A stretch of DNA of 64,000 nucleotides. Origin: Haliotis rubra. Lineage: Eukaryota. Within the stretch, counting starts at the first letter, position 1. Each line of letters opens with the position of its first letter. Shown piece after piece: positions 2,875 to 42,031 of the stretch. The position numbers were made by a program, and so were the translations under genes. The notes beneath the pieces are model-generated. The model was not told the DNA's origin and made no database searches. It worked only from the letters and a program-made list of their open reading frames with translations. The DNA lies in contig NW_025767511.1 of assembly GCF_003918875.1 (NCBI RefSeq), forward strand, positions 186,001 through 250,000, in the 5' to 3' direction.

Positions 2875-4075
2875 ATGGCTGGAAGTGGACCTGGATTGAA
2901 AACCCCAGACCTGGTGAAGAAGGTCGCTTCTGCCAACTCCCAGTTTGGTCTGGACCTGTACAAGAAAGTCGCCTCAGACCTGAAGGATTCCAATGTGTTT
3001 CTGTCTCCCTTCAGCATCTCGGCAGCTCTGGCCATGACCCAGCTGGGAGCTCGAGGTGACACAGCAGCTCAGATGAACCAGGTCCTGAAGTGGACTGACC
3101 TCCAGGACTCTGTACATCCAGGGTTTGAAGACTATCTGCGTCTTCTGAAAACACATGGAGACTACGTACTTACAACAGCCAACCGCTTGTTTGTGAATGA
3201 TAAGGCCAAGATTCTGGATGAATTTCTACAGAAGACAAAAAGCATTATGGTGCTCAGGCTGTTCTATCTGACTTTGTGGGCAATGGAGCTGGAGAGGCGG
3301 AGAAGATCAACCAATGGGTGGAATCGGAGACCAACAGCAAGATAAAGGATCTGATCACCGGTGGAATCGATCCACTGACAGCTATGATCCTTGTTAATGC
3401 CATATACTTCAAAGGCAACTGGGCAGAGAAATTTGATCCGACAAGGACAGAGAAGGGCACATTTAAGGTGAAGCCTGGAGAGACGGTACAAGTTGATATG
3501 ATGCGGATGAAGAAGAAGTTCAAGTTTGGCCTAAATGATGAACTGAACTGTTCTGTGTTGGAACTGCCTTATGTAAAGGAGGACCTTAGCATGTTTTTCT
3601 TGTTGCCTTACAAGGATGATGGTTTGGGAGAACTGGAAAGCAAACTGAATCATGAATCTTTGACGGAAGCCTTAAAACGCGTGTTCACAAAACTACTGTT
3701 GACATCTCTATGCCCAGATTTGTATTGGAATCAAGTTTTGAGCTGAATGAAGTCCTGAAGTCACTTGGAATGTCTGATGCTTTTGACAAGCAGAAAGCCG
3801 ATCTGTCCGGAATTGATGGAACCCGGCTCCTGTACGTCTCCCAGGTGGTCCACAAGGCCTTCCTGGAAGTGAACGAGGAGGGAAGTGAAGCTGCCGCGGC
3901 CACAGCAGTTACGATCAAGAAAAGATCCCGGCCTATTATTGAGCCTTTCAAGGCAGATCATCCCTTCCTGTTCCTCATCCGTGACAACCGAGCCGATGTT
4001 GTGCTTTTCATGGGCAGACTTTTTCGTCCTCCGACAGCAGGCTCAGCTGGTGTTTCACAGAAATCTGAACTGTAG
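2875..4075 (+). CDS. Serpin copy 1; RCL TIKKR|SRP; C-terminal KSEL; two frameshifts (~3240, ~3680), so pseudogene or assembly error
   Basis: ORFs 2800-3345, 3276-3746 and 3710-4075 jointly give a full serpin (NVFLSPFSIS, LVNAIYFKGNW, EEGSEAAAAT, FKADHPFLFLIRD). An in-frame upstream ATG lies at 2800. Confidence 0.93.
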
Positions 4076-4824
4076 AGCTGTTGATATGATTCTGTTACAG
4101 ATCAATGTTACTGTTATTTTGACTCTCTCCATTGATTTAATGAAGTAGATTGTTTGACTGAAACTATTCATACAACTGAATATTAGTTGAAACCTATTGG
4201 AGGGCTTCTGTTCAATATCATAGGCTGTCATTATGAATGCAGATGACCAATCTTTGACTAACTTTGTTTTAATTTAAACTGTGATCATTCCTTATGGTAT
4301 TAAGGGGCATTTTGTGTTGATAGGAAGTCAAAAGGTTTGGAGAACTGGGAATGCATATCAACTTCTCATCCTTGTATTGAAAGCAGCATTTGAAATTCCT
4401 CGTATTGAGGAAGCATGGTTTAAAATTGGCGCTGATCCGTGGCTTATTGACAGTCTGGAAATCTGATAATTGTCTTCAAACAGTCGTTTCTGGGTCTGTT
4501 AGTTCCTATGGAATTATGATAATGACGATGAATACCAATGTCATAATTAACAATAAGATCCTATATATTGTACTACATTTGCATTGAGAAACATGGTTAA
4601 AGCTGCACATTAAAATTACCCAGGTCAAAGGGTCAGTTCACACTTGCCATTCCTCTGTGTTCCTGAACCTCAGATGCTGTTTACACAAACCTTACCTTGC
4701 CCGACTGTGACACAGAATTTGGCTTATTGCTGGGGATGTCATACCATACATATCTTGATACCAAGCTGCCTGTGAGGGGATAGAAATCACATCTCATCCT
4801 ACCGGGTACCTGTTTATGTCAATA

Positions 4825-5222
4825 TGAGTGAGTGAGCATGGTTTTATGCTGCCTTTAGCAATATTCCAGCAATATCACGGCAGGGGACACCAGCAATGGG
4901 CTTCACACATTGTACCCATGTAGGGAATCGAACCCGGGGTCTTTAGCATGACGAGCTAACGCTTTAACCACTATGCTACCCCACCGCCCCTTATGTCAAT
5001 ATGAACAGAGGATTGTTTTGATCAGACCCACTTGCCTAAGATTGGTTGGTTGGTTGGTGGCACTCAGCAATATTCCAGCTAAATGGCTGCGGTCTGTAAA
5101 TAATCAAGTCTGGACCAGACAAACCAGTGAGCAACAGCATGAGCATCGATCTACAATCAGTGAGCCTGACCACCCGGCAACGTTAGTCGCCACTACGTCA
5201 AGCATGGCTTGCTAAAGACCAA
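4825..5222 (-). mobile_element. SINE family A (4825-4990) followed by SINE family B fragment (5040-5222)
   Basis: Reverse-complement matches to the other copies in the window. Confidence 0.8.
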
Positions 5223-6842
5223 TTTGCTAAACAGCTCAGATGGTTGTGCACAGTTTAACAGGCTGTCAGAAGAAAGTACACATGCATTACTCAAGTCACA
5301 TGCTACCAAGACGACATGGCTCAAGGTCATGTTCTGCCTTTTGTGCCTCGTAAGGATGGGAAAGCCACATTAACTTGGTGCGCCTAGAAGGCAGCAAGAG
5401 TTGTATGATCCCCAGGGAGTTGAGATTGAAAATATGATGTGCCGTTGTGATGGACATCCAATGATCGAGGGAAAACAAATGTCAGTATAATAATAATATT
5501 TAAAGCAGGTCATGTCATATTGCAGGGGGTTAGAGCCCACCCACACATTGCATTTGCTGTTACAGACGTTTTCTGTACTCTGTGTTGAAGTATCTTCATG
5601 TTATTTGTCAGTGATCTGATACAATAGACTGTCAAGAATGTACTGCTGCTTTCAAGCCATGACTCTGAATAGTAACTAGCAAAACCTGTTTGATGTGCTA
5701 AAAATAAACATTGATATTCAAAACACCAACATTTTCTGGTTAAACTGGTTTGAGAGCAGGTTACTTGATCAGGCCAATAAATGAGGTAAATATTTTAAAC
5801 TTTAATGACATTTGGAGTCCTCAAAGATGCATGGGAAGACAAGGTCGCAGGTAACCTCTGCTTGAAGTAAGGCTGACTAAAGTGGTCTGTGTGGCCATGT
5901 TGCTGGGTTTTGTTTTGTTGGGTCATGCTTCAGTCAGTGCTTTGTCTATTCTGTGCAACCAGCAAGAGGTCTGTACATAGTATTCTTGACTGAGATTAAT
6001 CAATGTTCATTTTCAGAAATCCCGATTTTACTTGAGATGCTTTTCCTAAGTTGAGCCATTGATGCTATTCATCTGAATTTTGTGAATAGATGAACAAGAA
6101 GAATGTGTACACGAATGTCATTGTGGTCAGTTGGGTAGTCTGAGGGTTAAAGTGTTTGGTTCTTCTAATGGGTAAAAGTGCAAAGCCGTGTCAGGTGTCC
6201 CTATCATATTGCTGGAATATTGCTAAAAGTAGCATTAAAAAAACAACTCACTCACTCACTCACTAACTCAATTTCATAGTTCAACTATTATATTTTGTTT
6301 ACTAAAAACAGAATGATAAAAATGTCTATCTTTTCTCCTGTTACTCTTTTCCATACTCTTGATCTATCTTAACTGATTCTGAGCACTACTAAACAATTCC
6401 CAGTGGTAATAACATGCCCGAGTATAGTCATGTTCAAATTTCTGTCCAAGAAATGGAAAAATGTTTCGAAATAAAATGAAACTGACCAATTCCTAGTAAG
6501 TATGCCTTGGAAAATCAGTGATGTCTAAACTCTATAATCAAATGATAGATTTGGTTCATACCTCGCTATCATGTCTTTCTGATTCATTTGGCTCAAATAC
6601 TCCCCATTTTCCCCTTCCAGTTCCTAAACATCCTGAAGAATCATCTTTACTGAGAAGATCTGTCACAGTGCGGACTTCAGCTTTGCTTGTTAGGCCTTGA
6701 TCCTTTGCTGTCCAATTCTGCTTCAAATGAACCCACTGACATCCATCTGTAAAAGAACTGAAGAGAATGTTGATGAGACAATTTGCTGTCTTTTCAAGTT
6801 ACCAGAACGTTATTAGTCTTGTGTGATTTCTTCTACAGAACC

Positions 6843-8045
6843 ATGGCTGGAAGTGAAAGTGGACTGAAGACCCCAGACCTGGTGAAGAAGGTCGCTTCTG
6901 CCAATTCCCAGTTTGGTCTGGACCTGTACAAGAAGGTCGCCTTAGAACTGAAGGACTCCAATGTGTTTCTGTCTCCCTTCAGCATCTCGGCAGCTCTGGC
7001 CATGACCCAGCTGGGAGCTCGAGGTGACACAGCAGCTCAGATGAACCAGGTCCTGAAGTGGACTGACATCCAGGACTCCGTACATCCAGGATTTGAAGAC
7101 TATCTGCGTCTTCTGAAAACACAGGGAGACTACGTACTTACAACAGCCAACCGCTTGTTTGTGAATGATAAGGCCAAGATTCTGGATGAATTTCTACAGA
7201 AGACAGAGAAGCATTATGGTGCTCAGGCTGTCCTGTCTGACTTTGTGGGCAATGGAGCTGGAGAGGCGGAGAAGATCAACCAATGGGTGGAATCGGAGAC
7301 CAACAGCAAGATAAAGGATCTGATCACAGGTGGAATCGATCCACTCACAGCTATGATCCTTGTTAATGCCATATATTTCAAAGGCAACTGGGCAGAGAAA
7401 TTTGATCCGACAAGGACAGAGAAGGGCATGTTTAAGGTGAAGCCTGGAGAGACGGTACAAGTTGATATGATGCGGATGGAGAAGAAGTTCAGGTTTGGCC
7501 TAAATGATGAACTGAACTGTTCTGTGTTGGAACTGCCTTATGTAAAGGAGGACCTTAGCATGTTCTTCTTGTTGCCTTACAAGGATGATGGTTTGGGAGA
7601 ACTGGAAAGCAAACTGAATCATGTATCTTTGACGGAAGCCTTAAAACGTGTTGTTCACAAAACTACTGTTGACATCTCTATGCCCAGATTTGTATTGGAA
7701 TCAAGCTTTGAGATGAATGAAGTCCTGAAGTCGCTGGGAATGTCTGATGCTTTTGACAAGCAGAAAGCTGATCTGTCCGGAATTGATGGAACCCGGCTCC
7801 TGTACGTCTCCCAGGTGGTCCACAAGGCCTTCCTGGAAGTGAACGAGGAGGGAAGTGAAGCTGCTGCAGCCACAGCAGTTACGATCATGTTTTTATCCCT
7901 CCCTATCACTGAGCCTTTCAAGGCAGATCATCCCTTCCTGTTCCTCATCCGTGACAACCGAGCCGATGTTGTGCTCTTCATGGGCAGACTTGTTCGTCCT
8001 CCCACAGCAGGCTCAGCTGGTGTTTCACAGAAAACTGAACTGTAG
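6843..8045 (+). CDS. Serpin copy 2 (type A), intact; RCL TIMFL|SLP; C-terminal KTEL
   Basis: Uninterrupted ORF with all serpin motifs; accATGg Kozak context after the ttcttctacag acceptor. Confidence 0.96.
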   Translation: MAGSESGLKTPDLVKKVASANSQFGLDLYKKVALELKDSNVFLSPFSISAALAMTQLGARGDTAAQMNQVLKWTDIQDSVHPGFEDYLRLLKTQGDYVLTTANRLFVNDKAKILDEFLQKTEKHYGAQAVLSDFVGNGAGEAEKINQWVESETNSKIKDLITGGIDPLTAMILVNAIYFKGNWAEKFDPTRTEKGMFKVKPGETVQVDMMRMEKKFRFGLNDELNCSVLELPYVKEDLSMFFLLPYKDDGLGELESKLNHVSLTEALKRVVHKTTVDISMPRFVLESSFEMNEVLKSLGMSDAFDKQKADLSGIDGTRLLYVSQVVHKAFLEVNEEGSEAAAATAVTIMFLSLPITEPFKADHPFLFLIRDNRADVVLFMGRLVRPPTAGSAGVSQKTEL

Positions 8046-8227
8046 AGCTGTTGATATGATTCTGAATTAGATCAACATTAATTAAGTAGATTGTTTGACT
8101 GAAACTATTCAAAGAGCTTCTGACAGTTTCCGGAAGTAGGCTAGTATATTGTTATTGTTTCCCCAGATGAAGGTACAAGAGTTCAGTAGGGATGTAGATA
8201 CTGATGGTTATTGGTATTCTTTACGTG

Positions 8228-8372
8228 TAACACCATATCCGACATTGAGGACCATATCCATAGTTAGAGACCATATCCGTTGTTGAGGGCCATATGTAAA
8301 TTTAAGGACCATATCCATTGTTGAGGACATATGTAATGTTAAGCACCATATCCGTTGTTGAGGACCAAATGT
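8228..8372 (+). repeat. Short minisatellite (gaccatatccrttgttgag-type units) in the serpin 3' flank; repeated after copies 2-6
   Basis: Recurrent accatatcc/ttgagg motif; homologues at ~11780, ~15325, ~18875 and ~23333. Confidence 0.8.
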
Positions 8373-8732
8373 AATGTGGGGAATCAAACCAGGGTCTTCG
8401 GCATGACAAGCCAGTGGTTTAACCACTAGGCTACCCCACTGCCCCTGTGTGAGAATGAACAGAGGATTATTTTGATTAAACCCACTTGCCTTAGAAGCCA
8501 CCACATGTGTTACATGTGCTTCAGTGTGGGGAGGGACTGAACACCCAGAAAATGTCAGGAGTCAAACTGCCGAATGTGGTCATTGATCCAACAACTTCTC
8601 TAATGCAACTTGATTCACCTGATCTGTGAAGTATGCACTTTACACAGGTCAATGTGCTACCACATAATGACAACCCTACAGATGTATATCAACAGAAAAC
8701 TGTATATTTGCTTCACTTATGGTTCAATGGAA

Positions 8733-8738
8733 AATAAA
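8733..8738 (+). terminator. Candidate polyadenylation signal ~690 nt after the copy 2 stop, conserved in each internal unit
   Basis: AATAAA in ggaaaataaattta; the same motif occurs at ~12281, ~15826, ~20287 and ~23833. Confidence 0.4.
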
Positions 8739-10394
8739 TTTATTCAAATTAAAAAGTGCATCTTTCAATGCATATTCACAAAGTCATCTTTACTGAAAGG
8801 TGATGATTATTTTGTTTTACTCTATCACGGGTTTAACTGTTTGTTAGGATTTTCAAAGATGCTTGAGAAGAAAAACTTGGAGGTAACCTCGGCTTGACCT
8901 AAAGTTGACTGAAGTGAATTGGGTGTCCGTGTTGCTTGGTTCGGTGTTGTTGGGTCATGCTTCAGTCAGTGGTTTGCCTATCCCAGATTCTATTATGTTC
9001 CATGAGCAAGATGTCTGGAGATAATCATGATAATAGTCTCGGCTGACATTAATCAATGTTCATTTTCTGAAATCCACATTTGACTCAATGTTTTACGTAA
9101 GTTATGCTATTGCTGTGATTTATCTGAATTTTGTGAGTACCGGTAGATGAACAACAAGAGAGTGTACTGGAATGCCATCAAGGTCAGTTGGGTAGTCTTG
9201 TGCTTAAAGTGTTTGAGTCTTCTCATGGGTAAAACGTGCGAAGCCCGTGTCTGATGTCTCTGTGATATTGTCGGAAAATTGTTAAAAATGGCATAACAAA
9301 CCCAACTCACTCACAATCACACTCACTCACTCAAACTCACTTAAATCCACTCATTCACTCACTGCACTGATATTCCTTGAGTAAGTGAATGAGTAAGTGA
9401 GTTGGTTTCCAGCATTATCATGGCGGGGGACACCAGAAATGGGCTTCACACAAATTACCCATGTGGGGAATCGAACCCTGGCCCTCGGCATGATGAGTGG
9501 AAGCTTTACCCACTAGGCTACCCCACAGTCCCCTGGAGCTGGGCGTATCTGGGCGCTGAATTCAGTTAGATTACATGAGGTAGTTGATTAATATCTTAAA
9601 TATCAGAAGTGGATGCAGAATTTTGAGAAAGAGAATGGAAGTACAAGGACAGTATATCAGATAGATATTAGTAGTATCTGAAAAGGGCACTTCCGGGAAA
9701 TCCCCCACCCCTTGGTTCTGACAGTGAATTTGGGGGATGGATATGTCACAAATGGGAAGCTAAAAGCAAAATAGATTTTAGTACCATGAGGATATATGTT
9801 TGTGTAAAAGGTTTTAGCTGAGTCTACTTTCATAGCTCAGCTATTTTATTTTGTTTTCTACAAAAACAGAATGATAAAGATTTTCTACTGTTGCTTCTCC
9901 TTTTCCGTACTCTTGATCCATCTTAACTGATTGTGAGTGCTACCAAACAATACCCAGCACCACTAACATGCCCAGGTATAGTCATGTTCTTATCTATGTC
10001 TAAGAAATGGGAAAAAAAGGAAACAAAAATGACATGTAACTGCCCAATTATTAGTAAGCCAGCCTTTGAAAACCTGCAGTGTCTTAACTGAATTATCAAT
10101 CGTAGATTTGGTTCATACCTCTCTATCATCTCTTTCTGTATGATTTTGCTCAAATACTCCCCATTTTCCCCTTCCAGTTCCTAAACATCCTGAAGAATCA
10201 TCTTTACTGAGAAGATCTGTCACAGTATGGACTTCAGCTTTGCTTGTTAGGCCTTGATCCTTTGCTGTCCAATTCTGCTTCAAATGAACTGACATTCATC
10301 TGTAAAAGAACTGAAGAATATGTTGATCAGACAATTGTTGTCTTTTCAAGTTACCAGAACATTACTTGTCTTGTGTGATTTCTTCTACAGAACC

Positions 10395-11594
10395 ATGGCT
10401 GGAAGTGGAACTGGACTGAAGACCCCAGACCTGGTGAAGAAGGTCGCTTCTGCCAATTCCCAGTTTGGTCTGGACCTGTACAAGAAGGTCGCCTTAGACC
10501 TGAAGGACTCCAATGTGTTTCTGTCTCCCTTCAGCATCTCAGCAGCTCTGGCCATGACCCAGCTGGGAGCTCGAGGTGACACAGCAGCTCAGATGAACCA
10601 GGTCCTGAAGTGGACTGACATCCAGGACTCCGTACATCCAGGGTTTGAATACTATCTGCGTCTTCTGAAAACACAGGAAGACTACGTACTTACAACAGCC
10701 AACCGCTTGTTTGTGAATGAAAAGGCCAAGATTCTGGATGAATTTCTACAGAAGACAGAGAAGCATTATGGTGCTCAGGCTGTTCTGTCTGACTTTGTGG
10801 GCAATGGAGCTGGAGAGGCTGAGAAGATCAACCAATGGGTGGAATCGGAGACCAACAGCAAGATAAAGGATCTGATCACTGGTGGAATCGATCCACTCAC
10901 AGCTATGATCCTTGTTAATGCCATATACTTCAAAGGCAACTGGGCAGAGAAATTTGATCCGACAAGAACAGAGAAGGGCACATTTAAGGTGAAGCCTGGA
11001 GAGACAGTACAAGTTGATATGATGCGGATGAAGAAGAAGTTCAGGTTTGGCCTAAATGATGAACTGAACTGTTCTGTGTTGGAACTGCCTTATGTAAAGG
11101 AGGACCTTAGCATGTTCTTCTTGTTGCCTGACAAAGATGATGGTTTGGGTGAACTGGAAAGCAAACTGAATCATGTATCTTTGATGGAAGCCTTAAAACG
11201 TGTTCACAAAACTACTGTTAACATCTCTATGCCCAGATTTGTATTGGAATCAAGCTTTGAGATGAATGAAGTCCTGAAGTCACTTGGAATGTCTGATGCT
11301 TTTGATGAGCAGAAAGCCGATCTGTCCGGGATTGATGGAACCCGGCTCCTGTATGTCTCTAAGGTGGTCCACAAGGCCTTCCTGGAAGTCAACGAGGAGG
11401 GAAGTGAAGCTGCCGCGGCCACAGCAGTTATATTCATGAGCAACTCGCTCCCTATAATTGAGCCTTTCAAGGCAGATCATCCCTTCCTGTTCCTCATCCG
11501 TGACAACCGAGCCGATGTTGTGCTCTTCATGGGCAGACTTGTTCGTCCTCCCACAGCAGGCTCAGCTGGTGTTTCACAGAAAACTGAACTGTAG
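10395..11594 (+). CDS. Serpin copy 3 (type B), intact; RCL IFMSN|SLP; KTEL
   Basis: Uninterrupted ORF 10320-11594 including an upstream in-frame ATG; all serpin motifs present. Confidence 0.96.
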   Translation: MAGSGTGLKTPDLVKKVASANSQFGLDLYKKVALDLKDSNVFLSPFSISAALAMTQLGARGDTAAQMNQVLKWTDIQDSVHPGFEYYLRLLKTQEDYVLTTANRLFVNEKAKILDEFLQKTEKHYGAQAVLSDFVGNGAGEAEKINQWVESETNSKIKDLITGGIDPLTAMILVNAIYFKGNWAEKFDPTRTEKGTFKVKPGETVQVDMMRMKKKFRFGLNDELNCSVLELPYVKEDLSMFFLLPDKDDGLGELESKLNHVSLMEALKRVHKTTVNISMPRFVLESSFEMNEVLKSLGMSDAFDEQKADLSGIDGTRLLYVSKVVHKAFLEVNEEGSEAAAATAVIFMSNSLPIIEPFKADHPFLFLIRDNRADVVLFMGRLVRPPTAGSAGVSQKTEL

Positions 11595-13937: not shown

Positions 13938-15138
13938 ATGGCTGGAAGTGGAACTGGACTGAAGACCCCAGACCTGGTGAAGAAGGTCGCTTCTGCCAAT
14001 TCCCAGTTTGGTCTGGACCTGTACAAGAAGGTCGCCTTAGAACTGAAGGACTCCAATGTGTTTCTGTCTCCCTTCAGCATCTCAGCAGCTCTGGCCATGA
14101 CCCAGCTGGGAGCTCGAGGGGACACAGCAGCTCAGATGAACCAGGTCCTGAAGTGGACTGACCTCCAGGACTCCGTACATCCAGGGTTTGAAGACTATCT
14201 CGTCTTCTGAAAACACAGGAGACTACGTACTTACAACAGCCAACCGCTTGTTTGTGAATGATAAGGCCAAGATTCTGGATGAATTTCTACAGAAGACAGA
14301 GAAGCATTATGGTGCTCAGGCTGTTCTGTCTGACTTTGTGGGCAATGGAGCTGGAGAGGCGGAGAAGATCAACCAATGGGTGGAATCGGAGACCAACAGC
14401 AAGATAAAGGATCTGATCACAGGTGGAATCGATCCACTCACAGCTATGATCCTTGTTAATGCCATATACTTCAAAGGCAACTGGGCAGAGAAATTTGATC
14501 CGACAAGGACAGAGAAGGGCATGTTTAAGGTGAAGCCTGGAGAGGCAGTACAAGTTGATATGATGCGGATGGAGAAGAAGTTCAGGTTTGGCCTAAATGA
14601 TGAACTGAACTGTTCTGTGTTGGAACTGCCTTATGTAAAGGAGGACCTTAGCATGTTCTTCTTGTTGCCTTACAAGGATGATGGTTTGGGAGAACTGGAA
14701 AGCAAACTGAATCATGTATCTTTGACGGAAGCCTTAAAACGCGTTGTTCACAAAACTACTGTTGACATCTCTATGCCCAGATTTGTATTGGAATCAAGCT
14801 TTGAGATGAATGAAGTCCTGAAGTCGCTGGGAATGTCTGATGCTTTTGACGAGCAGAAAGCTGATCTGTCCGGAATTGATGGAAGTCGCCTCCTGTATGT
14901 CTCTAAGGTGGTCCACAAGGCCTTCCTGGAAGTGAACGAGGAGGGAAGTGAAGCTGCTGCAGCCACAGCAGTTAGGATCATGACAAGATCGCTCCCTATA
15001 ATTGAGCCTTTCAAGGCAGATCATCCCTTCCTGTTCCTCATCCGTGACAACCGAGCCGATGTTGTGCTCTTCATGGGCAGACTTGTTCGTCCTCCCACAG
15101 CAGGCTCAGCTGGTGTTTCACAGAAAACTGAACTGTAG
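13938..15138 (+). CDS. Serpin copy 4 (type A); RCL RIMTR|SLP; KTEL; two single-G losses (~14200, ~14219)
   Basis: ORFs 13863-14210 and 14188-15138. The sequence reads tatctcgt where paralogues have tatctgcgt, and caggagac where they have cagggagac. Confidence 0.93.
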
Positions 15139-17485: not shown

Positions 17486-18688
17486 ATGGCTGGAAGTGGA
17501 ACTGGACTGAAGACCCCAGACCTGGTGAAGAAGGTCGCTTCTGCCAATTCCCAGTTTGGTCTGGACCTGTACAAGAAGGTCGCCTTAGACCTGAAGGACT
17601 CCAATGTGTTTCTGTCTCCCTTCAGCATCTCGGCAGCTCTGGCCATGACCCAGCTGGGAGCTCGAGGGGACACAGCAGCTCAGATGAACCAGGTCCTGAA
17701 GTGGACTGACATCCAGGACTCCTGTACATCCAGGGTTTGAAGACTATCTGCGTCTTCTGAAAACACAGGGAGACTACGTACTTACAACAGCCAACCGCTT
17801 GTTTGTGAATGATAAGGCCAAGATTCTGGATGAATTTCTACAGAAGACAGAGAAGCATTATGGTGCTCAGGCTGTTCTATCTGACTTTGTGGGCAATGGA
17901 GCTGGAGAGGCTGAGAAGATCAACCAATGGGTGGAATCGGAGACCAACAGCAAGATAAAGGATCTGATCACTGGTGGAATCGATCCACTGACAGCTATGA
18001 TCCTTGTTAATGCCATATACTTCAAAGGCAACTGGGCAGAGAAATTTGATCCGACAAGGACAGAGAAGGGCACATTTAAGGTGAAGCCTGGAGAAACAGT
18101 ACAAGTTGATATGATGCGGATGAAGAAGAAGTTCAGGTTTGGCCTAAATGATGAACTGAACTGTTCTGTGTTGGAACTGCCTTATGTAAAGGAGGACCTT
18201 AGCATGTTCTTCTTGTTGCCTGACAAAGATGATGGTTTGGGAGAACTGGAAAGCAAACTGAATCATGAATCTTTGACGGAAGCCTTAAAACGCGTGTTCA
18301 CAAAACTACTGTTAACATCTCTATGCCCAGATTTGTATTGGAATCAAGCTTCAAGCTGAATGAAGTCCTGAAGTCGCTTGGAATGTCTGATGCTTTTGAC
18401 GAGCAGAAAGCCGATCTGTCCGGGATCGATGGAACCCGGCTCCTGTATGTCTCCCAGGTGGTCCACAAGGCCTTCCTGGAAGTGAACGAGGAGGGAAGTG
18501 AAGCTGCTGCAGCCACAGCAGTTATGATCATGTGCAACTCGCTCCCTATAATTGAGCCTTTCAAGGCAGATCATCCCTTCCTGTTCCTCATCCGTGACAA
18601 CCGAGCCGATGTTGTGCTCTTCATGGGCAGACTTGTTCGTCCTCCCACAGCAGGCTCAGCTGGTGTTTCACAGAAAACTGAACTGTAG
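17486..18688 (+). CDS. Serpin copy 5 (type B); RCL MIMCN|SLP; KTEL; frameshifts at ~17722 and ~18293
   Basis: ORFs 17414-17740, 17799-18359 and 18323-18688 together form a complete serpin. Confidence 0.93.
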
Positions 18689-19065
18689 AGCCGTTGATAT
18701 GATTCTGAATTAGATCAACATTAATTAAGTAGATTGTTTGACTGAAACTATTCATAGAGCTTCTGACAGTTTCCAGAAGTAGGCTAGTATATTGTTGTTG
18801 TTTCCCTAGATGAAGGTACAAGAGTTCAATAGGGATGTAGATACTGATGGTTATTGGTATTCTTTACATGTAACACCATATCCAACATTGAGGACCATAT
18901 CCATAGTTAGAGACCATATCCGTTGTTGAGGGCCATATGTAAATTTAAGGACCATATACATTGTTGAGGACATATGTAATGTTAAGGACCATATCCATTG
19001 TTGAGGACCAAATGTAATGTGGGGAATCGAACCAGGGTCTTCGGCGTGACGAGCCAACGCTTTAA

Positions 19066-20009: not shown

Positions 20010-21944
20010 TTAACCATTAGGCTACCCCACTGCCCCCACTTGCCTTAGAAGCCACCACATGTGTTACATGTGCTTCAGTGTGGGGAGGGACTGAACACCC
20101 GGGTAAATGTCAGGAGTCAAACTGCCGACTGTGGTCATTGATCCATAACTCTTCTAATGCAACTTGATTCACATAATCTGTGAAGTATGCACTTTACACA
20201 GGTCAATGTGCTACCACATAATGACAACCCTACAGATGTATATCAACAGAAAACTGTATATTTGCTTCACACATGGTTCAATGGAAAATAAATTTATTCT
20301 GAGATTAAAAGTGCATCTTTCAATGCATATTCACAAAGTCATCTTTACTGAAAGGTGATGATTATTTTGTTTTACTCTATCACGGGTTTAACTGTTTGTT
20401 AGGATTTTCAAAGATGCTTGAGAAGAAAAACTTGGAGGTAACCTCGGCTTGACCTAAAGTTGACTGAAGTGAATTGGGTGTCCGTGTTGCTGGGTTCAGT
20501 GTTGTTGGGTCATGCTTCAGTCAGTGGTTTGCCTATCCCAGATTCTATTATGTTCCATGAGCAAGATGTCTGGAGATAATCATGATAATAATCTCGGCTG
20601 ACATTAATCAATGTTCATTTTCTGAAATCCACATTTGAGGTTTTCGTAAGTTATGCTATTGATGTAATTTATCTGAATTTTGTGAATAGATGAACAACAA
20701 GAAAGTGTACTGGAATGTCATCAAGGTCAGTTGGGTAGTCTTGTGGTTAAAGTGTTTGAGTCTTCTCATGGGTAAAATGTGCGAAGCCTGCGTCTGATGT
20801 CCCTGTGATATTGTCGGAAAATTGTTAAAAGTGTAATAAAAAACCCAACTCACTCACAATCACACTCACTCACTCAAACTCACTTAAATTCACTCACTCA
20901 CTCACTGCACTGATATTCCTTGAGTAAGTGAGTTGGTTTCCAGCAATATCATGGCGGGGGACACCAGAAATGGGCTTCACACAAATTACCCATGTGGGGA
21001 ATCGAACCCTGGCCCTCGGCATGATGAGTGGAAGCTTTACCCACTAGGCTACCCCACTGTCCCCTGGAGCGCTGGAGCGTATCTGGAGCACTGAATTCAG
21101 TAAGATTACACAAGTAGTTGATTAATATCTTAAATATCAGAAGTGGATGCAGAATTTTGAGAAAGAGAATGGAAGTACAAGGACAGTATATCAGATAGAT
21201 ATTATCAAAATCACTGGTAGTATCTGAAAAGGGCACTTCCGGGAAATCCCCCATCCCTTGGTTCTGACAGTGAATTTGGGGGATGGATATGTCACAAATG
21301 GGAAGCTAAAAGCAAAATAGATTTTAGTACCATAAGGATATATGTTTGTGTAAAAGGTTTTAGCTGAGTCTACTTTCATAGCTCAGCTATTTTATTTTGT
21401 TTTCTACAAAAACAGAATGATAAGGATTTTCTACTGTTGCTTCTCCTTGTCCAAACTCTTGATCCATCTTAACTGATTGTGAGTGCTACTAAACAATACC
21501 CAGCACCACTAACATGTCCAGGTATAGTCATGTTCTTATCTATGTCCAAGAAATGGGAAAAACAGGAAACAAAAATGACATGTAACTGCCCAATTATTAG
21601 TAAGCATGCCTTCGAAAACTTGCTGTGTCTTAACTGAATTATCAATCGTAGATTTGGTTCATACCTCTCTATCATCTCTTTCTGTATGACTTTTCTCAAA
21701 TACTCCCCATTTTCCCCTTCCAGTTCCTAAACATCCTGAAGAATCATCTTTACTGAGAAGATCTGTCACAGTATGGACTTCAGCTTTGCTTGTTAGGCCT
21801 TGATCCTTTGCTGTCCAATTCAGCTTCAAATGAACTCACTCACATTCATCTGTAAAAGAACTGAAGAATATGTTGATCAGACAATTGTTGTCTTTTCAAG
21901 TTACCAGAACATTACTTGTCTTGTGTGATTTCTTCTACAGAACC

Positions 21945-23147
21945 ATGGCTGGAAGTGGAACTGGACTGAAGACCCCAGACCTGGTGAAGAAGGTCGCTTC
22001 TGCCAATTCCCAGTTTGGTCTGGACCTGTACAAGAAGGTCGCCTTAGAACTGAAGGACTCCAATGTGTTTCTGTCTCCCTTCAGCATCTCGGCAGCTCTG
22101 GCCATGACCCAGCTGGGAGCTCGAGGTGACACAGCAGCTCAGATGAACCAGGTCCTGAAGTGGACTGACATCCAGGACTCCGTACATCCAGGGTTTGAAG
22201 ACTATCTGCGTCTTCTGAAAACACAGGGAGACTACGTACTTACAACAGCCAACCGCTTGTTTGTGAATGATAAGGCCAAGATTCTGGATGAATTTCTACA
22301 GAAGACAGAGAAGCATTATGGTGCTCAGGCTGTTCTGTCTGACTTTGTGGGCAATGGAGCTGGAGAGGCGGAGAAGATCAACCAATGGGTGGAATCGGAG
22401 ACCAACAGCAAGATAAAGGATCTGATCACAGGTGGAATCGATCCACTGACAGCTATGATCCTTGTTAATGCCATATACTTCAAAGGCAACTGGGCAGAGA
22501 AATTCGATCCGACAAGGACAGAGAAGGGCATGTTTAAGGTGAAGCCTGGAGAGACGGTACAAGTTGATATGATGCGGATGGAGAAGAAGTTCAGGTTTGG
22601 CCTAAATGATGAACTGAACTGTTCTGTGTTGGAACTGCCTTATGTAAAGGAGGACCTTAGCATGTTCTTCTTGTTGCCTTACAAGGATGATGGTTTGGGA
22701 GAACTGGAAAGCAAACTGAATCATGTATCTTTGACGGAAGCCTTAAAACGCGTTGTTCACAAAACTACTGTTGACATCTCTATGCCCAGATTTGTATTGG
22801 AATCAAGCTTTGAGATGAATGAAGTCCTGAAGTCGCTGGGAATGTCTGATGCTTTTGACGAGCAGAAAGCTGATCTGTCCGGAATTGATGGAAGTCGCCT
22901 CCTGTATGTCTCTAAGGTGGTCCACAAGGCCTTCCTGGAAGTGAACGAGGAGGGAAGTGAAGCTGCTGCAGCCACAGCAGTTACATTCATGTTTTTATCC
23001 CTCCCTATCTCTGAGCCTTTCAAGGCAGATCATCCCTTCCTGTTCCTCATCCGTGACAACCGAGCCGATGTTGTGCTCTTCATGGGCAGACTTGTTCGTC
23101 CTCCCACAGCAGGCTCAGCTGGTGTTTCACAGAAAACTGAACTGTAG
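21945..23147 (+). CDS. Serpin copy 6 (type A), intact; RCL TFMFL|SLP; KTEL
   Basis: Uninterrupted ORF 21870-23147. Confidence 0.96.
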   Translation: MAGSGTGLKTPDLVKKVASANSQFGLDLYKKVALELKDSNVFLSPFSISAALAMTQLGARGDTAAQMNQVLKWTDIQDSVHPGFEDYLRLLKTQGDYVLTTANRLFVNDKAKILDEFLQKTEKHYGAQAVLSDFVGNGAGEAEKINQWVESETNSKIKDLITGGIDPLTAMILVNAIYFKGNWAEKFDPTRTEKGMFKVKPGETVQVDMMRMEKKFRFGLNDELNCSVLELPYVKEDLSMFFLLPYKDDGLGELESKLNHVSLTEALKRVVHKTTVDISMPRFVLESSFEMNEVLKSLGMSDAFDEQKADLSGIDGSRLLYVSKVVHKAFLEVNEEGSEAAAATAVTFMFLSLPISEPFKADHPFLFLIRDNRADVVLFMGRLVRPPTAGSAGVSQKTEL

Positions 23148-25491
23148 AGCTGTTGATATGATTCTGAATTAGATCAACATTAATTAAGTAGATTGTTTGA
23201 CTGAAACTATTCAAAGAGCTGCTGACAGTTTCCGGAAGTAGGCTAGTATATTGTTATTGTTTCCCTAGATGAAGGTATAAGAGTTCAGTAGGGATGTAGA
23301 TACTGATGGTTATTGGTATTCTTTACGTGTAACACCATATCCGACATTGAGGACCATATCCATAGTTAGAGACCATATCCGTTGTTGAGGGCCATATGTA
23401 AATTTAAGGACCATATCCATTGTTGAGGACATATGTAATGTTAAGCACCATATCCGTTGTTGAGGACCAAATGTAATGTGGGGAATCAAACCAGGGTCTT
23501 CGGCATGACAAGCCAATGGTTTAACCACTAGGCTATCCCACCGCCCCTGTGTGAGAATGAACAGAGGATTATTTTGATTAAACCCACTTGCCTTAGAAGC
23601 CACCACATGTGTTACATGTGCTTCAGTGTGGGAGGGACTGAACACCAGAAAATGTCAGGAGTCAAACTGCCGAATGTGGTCATTGATCCAACAACTTCTC
23701 TAATGCAACTTGATTCACCTGATCTGTGAAGTATGCACTTTACACAGGTCAATGTGCTACCACATAATGACAACCCTACAGATGTATATCAACAGAAAAC
23801 TGTATATTTGCTTCACGTATGGTTCAATGGAAAATAAATTTATTCGAGATTAAAAGTGCATCTTTCAATGCATATTCACAAAGTCATCTTTACTGAAAGG
23901 TGATGATTATTTTGTTTTACTCTATCACGGGTTTAACTGTTTGTTAGGATTTTCAAAGATGCTTGAGAAGAAAAACTTGGAGGTAACCTCGGCTTGACCT
24001 AAAGTTGACTGAAGAGAATTGGGTGTCCGTGTTGCTGGGTTGGGTGTTGTTGGGTCATGCTTCAGTCAGTGGTTTGCCTATCCCAGATTCTATTATGTTC
24101 CATGAGCAAGATGTCTGGAGATAATCATGATAATAATCTCGGCTGACATTAATCAATGTTCATTTTCTGAAATCCACATTTGACTCGATGTTTTACGTAA
24201 GTTATGCTATTGATGTGATTTATCTGAATTTTGTGAGTAGATGAACAACAAGAGAGTGTACTGGAATGCCATCAAGGTCAGTTGGGTAGTCTTGTGCTTA
24301 AAGTGTTTGAGTCTTTTCATGGGTAAAACGTGCGAAGCCCGTGTCTGATGTCTCTGTGATATTGTCGGAAAATTGTTAAAAATGGCATAAAAAACCCAAC
24401 TCACTCACAATCACACTCACTCACTCAAACTCACTTAAATCCACTCATTCACTCACTGCACTGATATTCCTTGAGTAAGTGAATGAGTAAGTGAGTTGGT
24501 TTCCAGCATTATCATGGCGGGGGACACCAGAAATGGGCTTCACACAAATTACCCATGTGGGGAATCGAACCCTGGCCCTCGGCATGATGAGTGGAAGCTT
24601 TACCCACTAGGCTACCCCACTGTCCCCTGGAGCGCTGGAGCGTATCTGGAGCGCTGAATTCAGTTAGATTACGCAGGTAGTTGATTAATATCTTAAATAT
24701 CAGAAGTGGATGCAGAATTTTGAGAAAGAGAATGGAAGTACAAGGACAGTATATCAGATAAATATTAGTAGTATCTGAAAAGGGCACTTCCGGGAAATCC
24801 CCCATCCCTTGGTTCTGACAGTGAATTTGGGGGATGGATATGTCACAAATGGGAAGCTAAAAGCAAAATAGATTTTAGTACCATGAGGATATATGTTTGT
24901 GTAAAAGGTTTTAGCTGAGTCTACTTTCATAGCTCAGCTATTTTATTTTGTTTTCTACAAAAACAGAATGATAAGGATTTTCTACTGTTGCTTCTCCTTT
25001 TCCGTACTCTTGATCCATCTTAACTGATTGTGAGTGCTACCAAACAATACCCAGCACCACTAACATGCCCAGGTATAGTCATGTTCTTATCTATGTCTAA
25101 GAAATGGGAAAAAAAGGAAACAAAAATGACATGTAACTGCCCAATTATTAGTAAGCATGCCTTTGAAAACCTGCAGTGTCTTAACTGAATTATCAATCGT
25201 AGATTTGGTTCATACCTCTCTATCATCTCTTTCTGTATGATTTTGCTCAAATACTCCCCATTTTCCCCTTCCAGTTCCTAAACATCCTGAAGAATCATCT
25301 TTACTGAGAAGATCTGTCACAGTATGGACTTCAGCTTTGCTTGTTAGGCCTTGATCCTTTGCTGTCCAATTCTGCTTCAAATGAACTGACATTCATCTGT
25401 AAAAGAACTGAAGAATATGTTGATCAGACAATTGTTGTCTTTTCAAGTTACCAGAACATTACTTGTCTTGTGTGATTTCTTCTACAGAACC

Positions 25492-26694
25492 ATGGCTGGA
25501 AGTGGAACTGGACTGAAGACCCCAGACCTGGTGAAGAAGGTCGCTTCTGCCAATTCCCAGTTTGGTCTGGACCTGTACAAGAAAGTCGCCTTAGACCTGA
25601 AGGACTCCAATGTGTTTCTGTCTCCCTTCAGCATCTCGGCAGCTCTGGCCATGACCCAGCTGGGAGCTCGAGGTGACACAGCAGCTCAGATGAACCAGGT
25701 CCTGAAGTGGACTGACATCCAGGACTCCGTACATCCAGGGTTTGAAGACTATCTGCGTCTTCTGAAAACACACAGGGAGACTACGATACTTACAACAGCC
25801 AACCGCTTGTTTGTGAATGATAAGGCCAAGATTCTGGATGAATTTCTACAGAAGACAGAGAAGCATTATGGTGCTCAGGCTGTTCTGTCTGACTTTGTGG
25901 GCAATGGAGCTGGAGAGGCGGAGAAGATCAACCAATGGGTGGAATCGGAGACCAACAGCAAGATAAAGGATCTGATCACAGGTGGAATCGATCCACTGAC
26001 AGCTATGATCCTTGTTAATGCCATATACTTCAAAGGCAACTGGGCAGAGAAATTCGATCCGACAAGGACAGAGAAGGGCACATTTAAGGTGAAGCCTGGA
26101 GAGACCGTACAAGTTGATATGATGCGGATGAAGAAGAAGTTCAAGTTTGGCCTAAATGATGAACTGAACTGTTCTGTGTTGGAACTGCCTTATGTAAAGG
26201 AGGACCTTAGCATGTTCTTCTTGTTGCCTGACAAAGATGATGGTTTGGGAGAACTGGAAAGCAAACTGAATCATGAATCTTTGACGGAAGCCTTAAAACG
26301 TGTTCACAAAACTACTGTTGACATCTCTATGCCCAGATTTGTGCTGGAATCAAGCTTTGAGCTGAATGAAGTCCTGAAGTCGCTGGGAATGTCTGATGCT
26401 TTTGATGAGCAGAAAGCCGATCTGTCCGGAATTGATGGAACCCGGCTCCTGTACATCTCCCAGGTGGTCCACAAGGCCTTCCTGGAAGTGAACGAGGAGG
26501 GAAGTGAAGCTGCTGCAGCCACAGCAGTTAGGATCATGACAAGATCGCTCCCTATAATTGAGCCTTTCAAGGCAGATCATCCCTTCCTGTTCCTCATCCG
26601 TGACAACCGAGCCGATGTTGTGCTCTTCATGGGCAGACTTGTTCGTCCTCCCACAGCAGGCTCAGCTGGTGTTTCACAGAAAACTGAACTGTAG
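25492..26694 (+). CDS. Serpin copy 7 (type B); RCL RIMTR|SLP; KTEL; compensating +2/+1 indels at ~25770-25787
   Basis: ORF 25417-26694 is open. KTHRETTILTT replaces KTQGDYVLTT because of a local frame excursion. Confidence 0.95.
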   Translation: MAGSGTGLKTPDLVKKVASANSQFGLDLYKKVALDLKDSNVFLSPFSISAALAMTQLGARGDTAAQMNQVLKWTDIQDSVHPGFEDYLRLLKTHRETTILTTANRLFVNDKAKILDEFLQKTEKHYGAQAVLSDFVGNGAGEAEKINQWVESETNSKIKDLITGGIDPLTAMILVNAIYFKGNWAEKFDPTRTEKGTFKVKPGETVQVDMMRMKKKFKFGLNDELNCSVLELPYVKEDLSMFFLLPDKDDGLGELESKLNHESLTEALKRVHKTTVDISMPRFVLESSFELNEVLKSLGMSDAFDEQKADLSGIDGTRLLYISQVVHKAFLEVNEEGSEAAAATAVRIMTRSLPIIEPFKADHPFLFLIRDNRADVVLFMGRLVRPPTAGSAGVSQKTEL

Positions 26695-31098: not shown

Positions 31099-31169
31099 CA
31101 TTGGGGAACAAGGTTCCATTTTTTGTATCCTTACCAAAAGTTATTTGTTTTTGTAGAGGTGGTGGGAAG

Positions 31170-41891: not shown

Positions 41892-42031
41892 NNNNNNNNN
41901 NNNNNNNNNNNNNNNNNNNNNNNNNNNNNNNNNNNNNNNNNNNNNNNNNNNNNNNNNNNNNNNNNNNNNNNNNNNNNNNNNNNNNNNNNNNNNNNNNNNN
42001 NNNNNNNNNNNNNNNNNNNNNNNNNNNNNNN
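41892..42031. other. Assembly gap (140 N)
   Basis: Run of N. Confidence 1.

What the first reader, a model, noticed from the sequence alone, without database searches (positions are those of the whole stretch)
2875..26694. Seven-gene serpin array with homogenised scaffolds and a hypervariable five-codon bait cassette
Seen: bodies and spacers are near-identical, but the P5-P1 codons differ: acg atc aag aaa aga (3911); acg atc atg ttt tta (7881); ata ttc atg agc aac (11430); agg atc atg aca aga (14974); atg atc atg tgc aac (18524); aca ttc atg ttt tta (22983); agg atc atg aca aga (26530). Nearly all changes are non-synonymous, while the hinge GSEAAAATAV and P1' Ser are invariant. Known: the RCL P1 region sets serpin specificity, and accelerated RCL evolution occurs in rodent Serpina clusters. 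Inference: this is a recently expanded molluscan anti-protease repertoire with one scaffold and six baits (P1 Arg, Leu, Asn), possibly against pathogen proteases.
Basis: partly seen in the sequence, partly recalled or inferred. Interest (0 to 1): 0.9.

Follow-up and report, generated by a model that had tools for sequence, protein, structure and literature searches.

The report
Abalone serpin array with variable baits
The blacklip abalone has copied one protease-inhibitor (serpin) gene seven times in a row and changed almost only the short "bait" loop that decides which protease is trapped, a pattern already known from rodents and insects but documented here in a mollusc, with three of the seven copies broken in this assembly.

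Summary
The window is Haliotis rubra contig QXJH01000789.1. It carries seven tandem single-exon serpin copies.

Among the copies, 10 of 15 nucleotides in P5-P1 vary, against 5.9% in the rest of the CDS (p 4e-9; 0 of 20,000 permutations). Non-synonymous change there runs at 6.8 times the scaffold's synonymous rate, while scaffold dN/dS is about 0.18.

H. asinina and H. cracherodii have one copy and H. rufescens has two. All keep the bait RIMTR|S, so the expansion and the new baits (P1 Leu, P1 Asn, KKR|S) are lineage-specific.

- Copies 1, 4 and 5 carry uncompensated frameshifts, so only four ORFs and four distinct baits are intact.
- The variable patch spans P5-P5', not five codons.
- Spacers are near-identical only for units 3-7.
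- Copies 4 and 7 share the ancestral bait rather than a swapped one.

The genes belong to the ER-tagged (KTEL) secretory-pathway serpin lineage. A pathogen target is therefore untested.

This is a new member of a known kind (rodent Serpina1/3, Cotesia serpins). Copy number could not be checked against reads. Other first-reader notes of this scan cover the same window.

The parts
2875..4075 (+). Serpin copy 1 (bait TIKKR|S, tail KSEL). It is disrupted: a 1-nt deletion after 3237 and a +2 state at about 3680-3681. Length is 1201 nt.
6843..8045 (+). Serpin copy 2, intact 400-codon ORF from MAGSES (bait TIMFL|S). The upstream leader ORF is broken by a +1 insertion.
10395..11594 (+). Serpin copy 3, intact (bait IFMSN|S).
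13938..15138 (+). Serpin copy 4 (ancestral bait RIMTR|S). It is disrupted by two 1-nt deletions, after 14200 and after 14217. No protein is called for it in the public annotation.
17486..18688 (+). Serpin copy 5 (bait MIMCN|S). It is disrupted: +1 at 17723, and at 18294 the same +2 state as copy 1. The upstream ATG is changed to AGG. NCBI lists it as 'LOW QUALITY PROTEIN'.
21945..23147 (+). Serpin copy 6, intact (bait TFMFL|S).
25492..26694 (+). Serpin copy 7, open ORF (ancestral bait RIMTR|S). Compensated insertions at 25768-25769 and 25786 change QGDYV to HRETTI. It sits next to the conserved eighth serpin, as the single H. asinina gene does.
26530..26559 (+). Hypervariable patch P5-P5' of copy 7. 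The equivalent patches are 3911-3940, 7881-7910, 11430-11459, 14974-15003, 18524-18553 and 22983-23012.
   Evidence: the patch lies in a low-confidence exposed loop in the model
26560..26694 (+). The 135 nt 3' of the patch (strands s1C-s5B plus the KTEL tail). No variable site is found here among copies 2-7.
25417..25491 (+). In-frame upstream ATG plus a 25-codon hydrophobic leader, ending in a splice acceptor (ttcttctacag) 4 nt before the MAGSG start. It is present in copies 1, 3, 4, 6 and 7 and conserved in H. asinina, H. rufescens copy A and H. cracherodii.
5805..5969 (+). Two alternative 5' exons used by public gene models. One is joined to copy 2. The other is joined to copy 3, skipping copy 2. 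This region is the orthologue of the H. asinina upstream region.
31101..32330 (+). Eighth, divergent serpin (44% identical). It is the orthologue of the gene downstream of the single H. asinina copy and marks the 3' boundary of the array.

Best explanation
This is a Haliotis rubra-specific tandem expansion of a single-exon, inhibitory serpin gene.

The gene belongs to the KDEL-like-tagged secretory-pathway serpin lineage. Its ancestral bait, RIMTR|S, is kept in copies 4 and 7 and in four other abalone species.

The array grew in two phases. An older duplication produced copies 1 and 2. More recently, a two-gene unit of about 7.1 kb was amplified: A-type copies 3, 5 and 7 alternate with B-type copies 4 and 6.

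The scaffold stays under purifying selection and is partly homogenised between copies by gene conversion. The ten codons around the scissile bond have been driven apart by diversifying selection.

Each intact protein should work as a classical suicide-substrate serpin. The target protease cleaves P1-P1', and the hinge (small residues at P14-P9) inserts into beta-sheet A and traps the enzyme. Changing P1 from Arg to Leu or Asn, together with P5, P4, P2 and P5', re-aims the same scaffold at different proteases.

Shown here: the anatomy, the family, the lineage specificity, the excess of bait substitutions and the mosaic scaffold. Inferred: selection as the cause, inhibitory activity, cellular compartment and targets.
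For: Family and fold:
- Pfam Serpin match at 9e-126 over the whole profile.
- Human SERPINB1 (4GA7) at 2e-89. The engineered consensus serpin 'conserpin' aligns its R|S on the query's R|S.
- The AlphaFold model has pLDDT 85.5, with the low-confidence loop exactly at the bait. Foldseek TM-scores to solved serpins are 0.8-0.9.

Lineage specificity:
- H. asinina and H. cracherodii have one array-type copy and H. rufescens has two. No further copy lies 4.2 kb upstream of the window.
- The baits of copies 4 and 7 are nucleotide-identical to H. asinina over P5-P1, although dS between the species is 0.27.

Selection:
- Scaffold dS is 0.02-0.10 and omega 0.07-0.29.
- Scaffold parsimony steps are 44 synonymous and 27 non-synonymous (0.164 and 0.030 per site).
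- P5-P1 has 14 non-synonymous steps on 12.6 sites, 6.8 times the synonymous rate (Poisson p 4e-8). The McDonald-Kreitman-style 2x2 table gives p 3e-4.
- Closely related pairs still differ only by replacements. Copies 3 and 5 differ by three non-synonymous changes in 15 nt, against 1.3% unit divergence.

Dimer history: the partition {4,6} versus {3,5,7} is found at 52 sites across spacer and CDS.

Homogenisation:
- The 5' flanks of units 1 and 2 differ from those of units 3-7 by 16-45%, yet their CDS differ by only 1.5-3.4%.
- None of the 135 sites 3' of the bait varies.
- CDS site patterns are mosaic.
- A neighbouring paralogue in H. rufescens and H. cracherodii is a mosaic. It is about 97-100% identical over the first 90 residues and 90% just before the bait, but about 50% in between.

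Independent repeat of the pattern: the two H. rufescens copies differ at 3/15 bait sites against 2.2% elsewhere, and one has P1 Asn.

Lineage and tag: relatives in lancelet, echinoderms, hemichordates, bivalves and other gastropods share the xMxxR|S bait and a [KRH]xEL tail (PMC2556349). KTEL proteins localise to the ER in human cells (PMC2140024).
Against: - Three of seven copies are frameshifted, so part of the 'repertoire' may be dead. Alternatively the assembly, which I recall (not checked here) as nanopore-based, may carry indel errors in a repeat that is hard to polish.
- Copy number and order cannot be verified without reads. No independent contig or transcript fragment with any of these baits exists in the protein collection.
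- Synonymous change is also raised inside the patch (6 steps against 1.1 expected). The patch's own dN/dS is therefore near 1. Part of the contrast may reflect older bait lineages surrounded by homogenised flanks, rather than a recent burst of replacement.
- No likelihood-based site model could be run.
- Activity, targets, expression and localisation are all untested.
Confidence: 0.75

Rival explanations
1. Old bait lineages with homogenised flanks. On this reading the bait types (TR, FL, N, KR) are much older than the scaffolds suggest. Repeated gene conversion or unequal crossing-over erased divergence everywhere else, and selection only prevents conversion of the bait. This would mean there was no recent burst of adaptive substitution.
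For: - Synonymous steps in P5-P5' are about five times the expected number.
- The CDS is far more alike than the 5' flanks between units 1/2 and units 3-7.
- No site varies in the 135 nt after the bait.
- The FL bait sits on copies 2 and 6, although copy 6's closest scaffold relative is copy 4. This requires at least one transfer of a bait segment.
Against: - H. asinina and H. cracherodii have only the ancestral bait and a single copy.
- Units 3-7 share spacers at 96-99% in a clean A/B dimer pattern, as expected from recent whole-unit duplication.
- Within the N-type and FL-type pairs the differences are again mostly replacements.
Confidence: 0.15
2. Assembly artefact. The array could be inflated or mis-ordered, for example by haplotypes or collapsed reads placed in tandem. 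The six baits would then be alleles of about three loci, and the frameshifts would be uncorrected long-read errors.
For: - A-type units differ by only 0.9-1.3%, which is plausibly in the range of allelic divergence in abalone.
- Three copies have single-base indels. Two of them share an identical one in a CGCG context.
- NCBI flags copy 5 as low quality.
- There is no independent sequence support.
Against: - There are no N runs in the array.
- Units have private insertions: about 420 bp in unit 2 and about 910 bp in unit 6.
- Units carry many private substitutions as well as the regular A/B alternation.
- At least six different baits exist in one individual.
- An independent assembly of H. rufescens also shows duplication with bait divergence.
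Confidence: 0.07
3. Relaxed constraint or a local mutational process. Redundant copies might decay, or the patches might be pasted in by micro-conversion from distant paralogues. No selection for new specificities would then be involved.
For: - Three copies look like pseudogenes.
- Multi-nucleotide codon changes occur (ACA to TTT, AGA to TTA), and synonymous change in the patch is raised.
Against: - Neutral decay cannot exceed the synonymous rate 6.8-fold in 15 nt while the adjacent 135 nt stay invariant and scaffold omega stays at about 0.18.
- No donor sequence for any derived bait exists elsewhere in the window or among the paralogue baits seen in other Haliotis species.
- P1' Ser, P3' Pro and the hinge are untouched.
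Confidence: 0.03

Closest known systems
Rodent Serpina1 (alpha1-proteinase inhibitor) and Serpina3 clusters and mouse Serpinb9 expansion; woodrat SERPINA3 array
   Same: These are tandem paralogues with conserved scaffolds and a hypervariable reactive-centre loop. The loop evolves faster than silent sites, some copies are pseudogenes, and the expansions are lineage-specific. Sources: PMC3880077; Barbour et al. 2002 as cited in PMC12646145.
   Different: The rodent genes are vertebrate clade A/B genes with several exons, and most are secreted plasma or cytosolic proteins. The abalone genes have a single coding exon, a KTEL tail and a different ancestral lineage.
Cotesia vestalis (parasitoid wasp) duplicated serpins
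   Same: An invertebrate case of gene duplication with positive selection around P1-P1' (PMC10735303).
   Different: The wasp serpins are secreted virulence factors of a parasitoid, and their scaffolds are much more diverged. No near-identical tandem units or concerted evolution are described in the passages I read.
Drosophila Spn42Da (Spn4): one scaffold, four alternative bait exons, with or without signal peptide
   Same: Both are secretory-pathway, ER-tagged types, and the ancestral target class is Arg-specific. One scaffold presents several baits. Isoforms with and without an N-terminal leader look possible in both (PMC4006314).
   Different: Drosophila switches a terminal bait exon by alternative splicing within one gene. 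The abalone duplicates the whole coding exon. Mutually exclusive bait exons are absent here.
Lancelet Spn-1, sea-urchin Spu-Spn-1 and the neuroserpin lineage (KDEL/HEEL-tagged convertase inhibitors)
   Same: The abalone proteins are about 48% identical to the lancelet protein. Both carry a C-terminal extension ending in a KDEL-like signal and a bait of the form xMxxR|S (PMC2556349).
   Different: The lancelet and sea-urchin baits have the dibasic KR before the scissile bond. The abalone ancestral bait has TR, and only the frameshifted copy 1 has KKR. A signal peptide is not demonstrated. PDCD10 synteny and the diagnostic indel were not checked.

Membership tests
Serpin superfamily, inhibitory type | Full-length serpin domain | tested here: met
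   PF00079 at 9.2e-126, profile positions 2-370 of 370
Serpin superfamily, inhibitory type | Serpin fold with an exposed reactive-centre loop | tested here: met
   The model has pLDDT 85.5 and pTM 0.85, with residues 338-353 disordered. Foldseek against antithrombin, PAI-2 and SERPINB1 gives E about 1e-40 and TM 0.8-0.9.
Serpin superfamily, inhibitory type | Hinge consensus (P17 Glu, P15 Gly, P14 Ser/Thr, small residues P12-P9) and a 17-residue distance from P17 to P1 | tested here: met
   EEGSEAAAATAV is invariant in all seven copies. R|S aligns with conserpin R|S.
Serpin superfamily, inhibitory type | Forms covalent SDS-stable complexes with target proteases | not testable with these tools
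   Needs recombinant protein
Hypervariable-bait tandem serpin clusters (rodent Serpina1/Serpina3 type) | Tandem, lineage-specific paralogues | tested here: met
   Seven copies in 24 kb, against one copy in H. asinina and H. cracherodii and two in H. rufescens
Hypervariable-bait tandem serpin clusters (rodent Serpina1/Serpina3 type) | Bait replacement rate above the silent rate while the scaffold is constrained | tested here: met
   The bait replacement rate is 6.8 times the scaffold synonymous rate, p 4e-8. Scaffold omega is about 0.18. The patch's own synonymous rate is also raised.
Hypervariable-bait tandem serpin clusters (rodent Serpina1/Serpina3 type) | Paralogues differ in inhibition spectrum | not testable with these tools
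   Needs protease panels
ER-tagged secretory-pathway serpins (Spn-1 / Spn42Da-A / neuroserpin lineage) | C-terminal extension ending in a KDEL-type retrieval signal | tested here: met
   A 14-residue extension ends in KTEL (KSEL in copy 1). Relatives end in KDEL, RDEL, KQEL or HQEL. KTEL proteins were ER-localised in PMC2140024.
ER-tagged secretory-pathway serpins (Spn-1 / Spn42Da-A / neuroserpin lineage) | N-terminal signal peptide | tested here: inconclusive
   A conserved in-frame 25-codon hydrophobic leader lies upstream of MAGSG in 5 of 7 copies and in three other species. The same stretch also reads as the 3' end of an intron. No signal-peptide predictor was available. The H. discus discus database entry 'serpin B-like protein 1' (AKB08729.1) starts at MAGSG.
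ER-tagged secretory-pathway serpins (Spn-1 / Spn42Da-A / neuroserpin lineage) | Dibasic (K/R)-R before the scissile bond | tested here: not met
   The ancestral bait is RIMTR|S, with P2 Thr. Only the frameshifted copy 1 has KKR|S.
ER-tagged secretory-pathway serpins (Spn-1 / Spn42Da-A / neuroserpin lineage) | Microsynteny with PDCD10 and the two-residue indel after position 173 (alpha1-antitrypsin numbering) | not tested
   No tool-supplied reference sequences were at hand
Bait switching by mutually exclusive exons (Spn42Da, Manduca serpin-1) | Several alternative bait exons behind one shared scaffold | tested here: not met
   Each copy is a complete, uninterrupted coding exon of 1200-1203 nt

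The most novel reading that the evidence does not exclude
The array may not be seven independent genes. It could be a composite locus in which leader exons upstream of copy 2, the orthologue of the single-gene promoter region, are spliced to the acceptor that sits 4 nt before every start codon. One whole coding exon, and thus one bait, would be chosen per transcript. An unspliced form would keep a hydrophobic leader, so that with the KTEL tail each bait could be made in an ER form and a cytosolic form. That would be a whole-CDS counterpart of bait-exon switching in Drosophila Spn42Da, in the same serpin lineage. The evidence so far is limited. A public model joins an exon at 5925-5967 to copy 3 across copy 2. 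H. rufescens models join the copy-A leader to the copy-B body. Adjacent serpins are annotated as isoforms of one gene in three species. These models could be read-through or multi-mapping artefacts.
Probability: 0.2. Interest if true: 0.65.

Novelty: new member of a known kind. Interest (0 to 1): 0.42.

Why it matters
This is a compact natural experiment in serpin specificity. Nearly identical scaffolds differ almost only at P5-P5', and the ancestral state is known from four sister species. The intact copies can be expressed and compared directly to learn what proteases a P1 Arg-to-Leu or Arg-to-Asn switch captures in a mollusc.

The finding extends the 'hypervariable bait in tandem serpins' pattern from mammals and insects to a gastropod, and to the ER-tagged secretory-pathway serpin lineage. 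H. rubra is a farmed species affected by infectious disease, so copy-number and bait polymorphism at this locus could be screened against disease outcome. That link is speculative.

Tried and rejected
1. I searched the 5.8-billion-protein collection with the C-terminal 130 residues of copy 6, hoping to find transcript or contig fragments carrying any of the baits. The best hit was 59% identical. No independent confirmation of the array or of expression was therefore obtained.

2. I looked for donor sequences of the derived baits elsewhere in the window, allowing up to 6 mismatches in 24 nt. None lies outside the array.

3. I tested the idea that copy 4 received its bait from copy 7 by a cassette swap. 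Both are identical to H. asinina, so both simply retain the ancestral state. The transfer that is actually required concerns the FL bait shared by copies 2 and 6.

4. I considered that copy 1 (KKR|S) is the founder. This is rejected. The ancestral bait in all other species is RIMTR|S, copy 1 is frameshifted, and its nearest relative in both flank and CDS is copy 2.

5. I considered whether the frameshifts are simple homopolymer errors. Most are not in long homopolymers, and copies 1 and 5 share one. This decides nothing either way.

6. Literature searches for an abalone or mollusc report of this array found none in the open library. The paper behind the H. discus discus 'serpin B-like protein 1' entry was not available.

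7. PolyA hexamers downstream of each copy were uninformative.

Full report
**Identity of the window.** Public proteins that match the window's ORFs exactly sit on a 491,208-bp contig. Neighbouring models are named 'leukocyte elastase inhibitor-like [Haliotis rubra]'. A look-up places the window on QXJH01000789.1 of GCA_003918875.1, with window position 1 at about record position 186,001.

**The observation.** A six-frame scan finds the hinge EEGSEAAAATAV seven times on the + strand, at spacings of 3.54-3.55 kb, with two longer units of 3.97 and 4.46 kb. An eighth, divergent serpin starts at 31101. Pfam matches the whole serpin profile at 9e-126.

The nearest solved natural structure by sequence is human SERPINB1, at 2e-89. 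The engineered consensus serpin 'conserpin' aligns its R|S scissile bond on the R|S of copy 7. This agrees with counting 17 residues from the hinge Glu. An AlphaFold model of copy 6 has pLDDT 85.5 and is disordered exactly over residues 338-353, which is the loop. It superposes on antithrombin, PAI-2 and SERPINB1 with TM-scores of 0.8-0.9.

**Is the bait really hypervariable?** Among the seven copies, 85 of 1194 aligned CDS positions vary. Ten of the 15 P5-P1 positions and 16 of the 30 P5-P5' positions vary, against 5.9% elsewhere (Fisher p 4e-9 and 7e-12). In 20,000 permutations no 15- or 30-nt window reached the observed count. Only five codons have three or more amino-acid states, and four of them are P5, P2, P1 and P5'.

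Pairwise scaffold dS is 0.02-0.10, with omega 0.07-0.29. Counting minimum steps gives these figures:

| Region | Synonymous steps | Non-synonymous steps | Rate per site |
|---|---|---|---|
| Scaffold | 44 | 27 | 0.164 (syn), 0.030 (non-syn) |
| P5-P1 | 2 | 14 (on 12.6 sites) | 1.11 (non-syn) |

The P5-P1 non-synonymous rate is 6.8 times the scaffold's silent rate (Poisson p 4e-8; 2x2 test p 3e-4).

The 135 nt that follow the patch contain no variable site among copies 2-7.

One qualification is needed. Synonymous steps inside P5-P5' are also raised, at 6 against 1.1 expected (p 1e-3). Part of the contrast may therefore come from older bait lineages embedded in homogenised flanks.

**Corrections to the anatomy.**
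- *Start of the CDS.* The real CDS most likely starts at MAGSG, 75 nt downstream of the first ATG of the long ORFs. A polypyrimidine tract and AG acceptor (ttcttctacag) ends 4 nt before that ATG in every copy. Public models join other 5' exons there (P0002, P0125, P0126). The H. discus discus database entry 'serpin B-like protein 1' also starts at MAGSG.
- *Broken copies.* From that start, copies 2, 3, 6 and 7 are open (1200-1203 nt). Copy 1 has a 1-nt deletion after 3237 and a +2 state at 3680-3681. Copy 4 has two 1-nt deletions, after 14200 and 14217. Copy 5 has +1 at 17723 and the same +2 state as copy 1 at 18294. Copy 7 carries a compensated +2/+1 pair (25768-25786) that rewrites six residues. 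The public annotation calls no protein for copies 1 and 4 and marks copy 5 'LOW QUALITY PROTEIN'. Whether these are true pseudogenes or residual long-read indels in a repeat cannot be decided here. Intact baits are TIMFL|S, IFMSN|S, TFMFL|S and RIMTR|S.
- *Size of the patch.* The variable patch runs from P5 to P5' (28 nt). P1' Ser and P3' Pro are fixed, and P3 Met is changed only in copy 1.

**History of the array.** Units 3-7 are 96-99% identical over the full 3.55 kb. At 52 sites spread over spacer and CDS, copies 4 and 6 share one state and copies 3, 5 and 7 the other. The recent growth was therefore by amplification of a two-gene unit.

Units 1 and 2 are older. Their 5' flanks resemble each other (6-7% divergence) but differ by 16-45% from those of units 3-7. 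Their CDS nevertheless differ from the others by only 1.5-3.4% for copy 2 and a few percent for copy 1. This indicates homogenisation of the coding region. Mosaic site patterns inside the CDS point the same way. So does a neighbouring paralogue in H. rufescens and H. cracherodii. It is nearly identical to the array type over the first 90 residues and again just before the bait, but about 50% identical in between.

**Comparison across species.**

| Species | Array-type copies | Bait(s) | Note |
|---|---|---|---|
| H. asinina | 1 | RIMTR\|S | followed 5 kb downstream by the orthologue of the window's eighth serpin |
| H. cracherodii | 1 | RIMTR\|S | |
| H. rufescens | 2, 7.8 kb apart | RIMTR\|S and RVMTN\|S | |
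| H. discus discus | protein entry only | RIMTR\|S | |

Copies 4 and 7 are nucleotide-identical to H. asinina over P5-P1, despite dS of 0.27 between the species. RIMTR|S is therefore ancestral and strongly conserved, and the other five baits are derived in the H. rubra lineage. Copies 4 and 7 share a retained ancestral state, so no cassette swap between them is needed. What does require a transfer is the FL-type bait, found on copies 2 and 6. Copy 6's closest relative in spacer and scaffold is copy 4 (7 differences in 1031 nt, against 12 in the 30-nt patch).

The two H. rufescens copies repeat the pattern in an independent assembly. They differ at 3 of 15 bait positions against 2.2% elsewhere, again producing P1 Asn but with a different codon.

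**Which kind of serpin.** All copies end in a 14-residue extension finishing with KTEL (KSEL in copy 1). The relatives retrieved form a recognisable group with a KDEL-type tail and a bait of the form xMxxR|S. The group includes the Branchiostoma protein with NMMKR|S and KDEL, echinoderm, hemichordate, scallop and clam proteins, and gastropod proteins from Gigantopelta (RIQTR|S, KQEL), Patella and Lottia.

This is the secretory-pathway serpin lineage of Kumar and Ragg (PMC2556349). The lancelet member inhibits proprotein convertases. Human proteins ending in KTEL were ER-localised in PMC2140024.

A 25-codon in-frame hydrophobic leader upstream of MAGSG is conserved in five copies and three other species. 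It resembles the position of the signal peptides of scallop and Gigantopelta relatives, but I could not test it as a signal peptide.

The likeliest original role is therefore control of an Arg-specific endogenous protease in the secretory pathway. The derived copies are candidates for new targets. A pathogen protease is possible but unsupported.

**Comparison with what is known.** Tandem serpin paralogues with conserved scaffolds and hypervariable baits are classical in rodents: six Serpina1 and nine Serpina3 genes in mouse, and seven Serpinb9 genes plus a pseudogene (PMC3880077). Barbour et al. 2002 described the hypervariable loop, as cited in PMC12646145, which reports a tandem SERPINA array with functional variation against snake venom. 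Positive selection around P1-P1' after duplication is also reported for Cotesia vestalis serpins (PMC10735303).

Drosophila Spn42Da is also a secretory-pathway serpin, one that inhibits proprotein convertases. It offers several baits on one scaffold by alternative exons, with and without a signal peptide (PMC4006314). The abalone reaches a similar end by duplicating the whole coding exon. I found no report of this array or of a comparable mollusc case in the open library.

**Verdict.** The feature is real in the sequence, statistically robust, and correctly read in outline. It is a new member of a known kind. Its main weaknesses are the unverifiable copy number, three disrupted copies, and the absence of any expression or activity data.

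The most novel reading still open is that leader exons are shared among copies. One public model joins an exon upstream of copy 2 to copy 3. H. rufescens models join the copy-A leader to the copy-B body. I give this reading about 0.2.

Noticed in passing
window 5805-5969 and 10388-10395; L001 10001-19110: A public H. rubra model (isoform X2 of copy 3) takes its first exon from upstream of copy 2 and splices across the whole of copy 2 to the acceptor of copy 3. In H. rufescens a model joins the copy-A leader to the copy-B body. Adjacent serpins are annotated as isoforms of one gene in three Haliotis species.
   Followed up: partly
window 25417-25491 (and equivalents) plus 26680-26691: A conserved in-frame hydrophobic leader ORF lies upstream of the MAGSG start, and the protein ends in KTEL. 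Together these suggest ER-resident and cytosolic forms. The leader ORF is lost in copy 2 (frameshift) and copy 5 (ATG changed to AGG).
   Followed up: partly
window 31101-32330: The eighth serpin is 44% identical to the array copies and has a short loop reading CTMMDCVDGLV. Its orthologue at 92% nucleotide identity sits in the same position in H. asinina (L002 14972-16231).
   Followed up: partly
L003 17221-18387; L001 (protein P0008): A neighbouring 388-residue serpin in H. cracherodii and H. rufescens is a mosaic. It is about 97-100% identical to the array-type gene over residues 1-90 and 90% just before the bait, but about 50% identical in between. Its bait is basic (RKRKRVRED).
   Followed up: partly
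window 339-1325: An ORF with a partial reverse-transcriptase domain (RVT_1, E 1.6e-8) lies just upstream of copy 1. It is probably a retroelement remnant at the array's 5' edge.
   Followed up: no
window 4825-4990, 2569-2733, 27694-27853, 39376-39541, 51433-51596 and more than 15 other places: An interspersed repeat of about 165 bp occurs on both strands at 80-88% identity. It looks like a SINE or MITE and also occurs in the serpin spacers.
   Followed up: no
window 33007-33715, 47664-48905, 52561-53350: Three long minisatellite arrays have periods of 35, 34 and 44 nt. Long repeat-derived ORFs rich in Pro, Thr and His run through 48105-48932. GC skew is strong at 48-50 kb.
   Followed up: no
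window 61868-63106: A 412-residue ORF on the + strand has leucine-rich repeats, a cysteine-rich flank and an apparent transmembrane segment. It may be an LRR receptor-like gene.
   Followed up: no
window 41892-42031: This is the only N run (140 nt) in the window. It lies well outside the serpin array and was left as it is.
   Followed up: no
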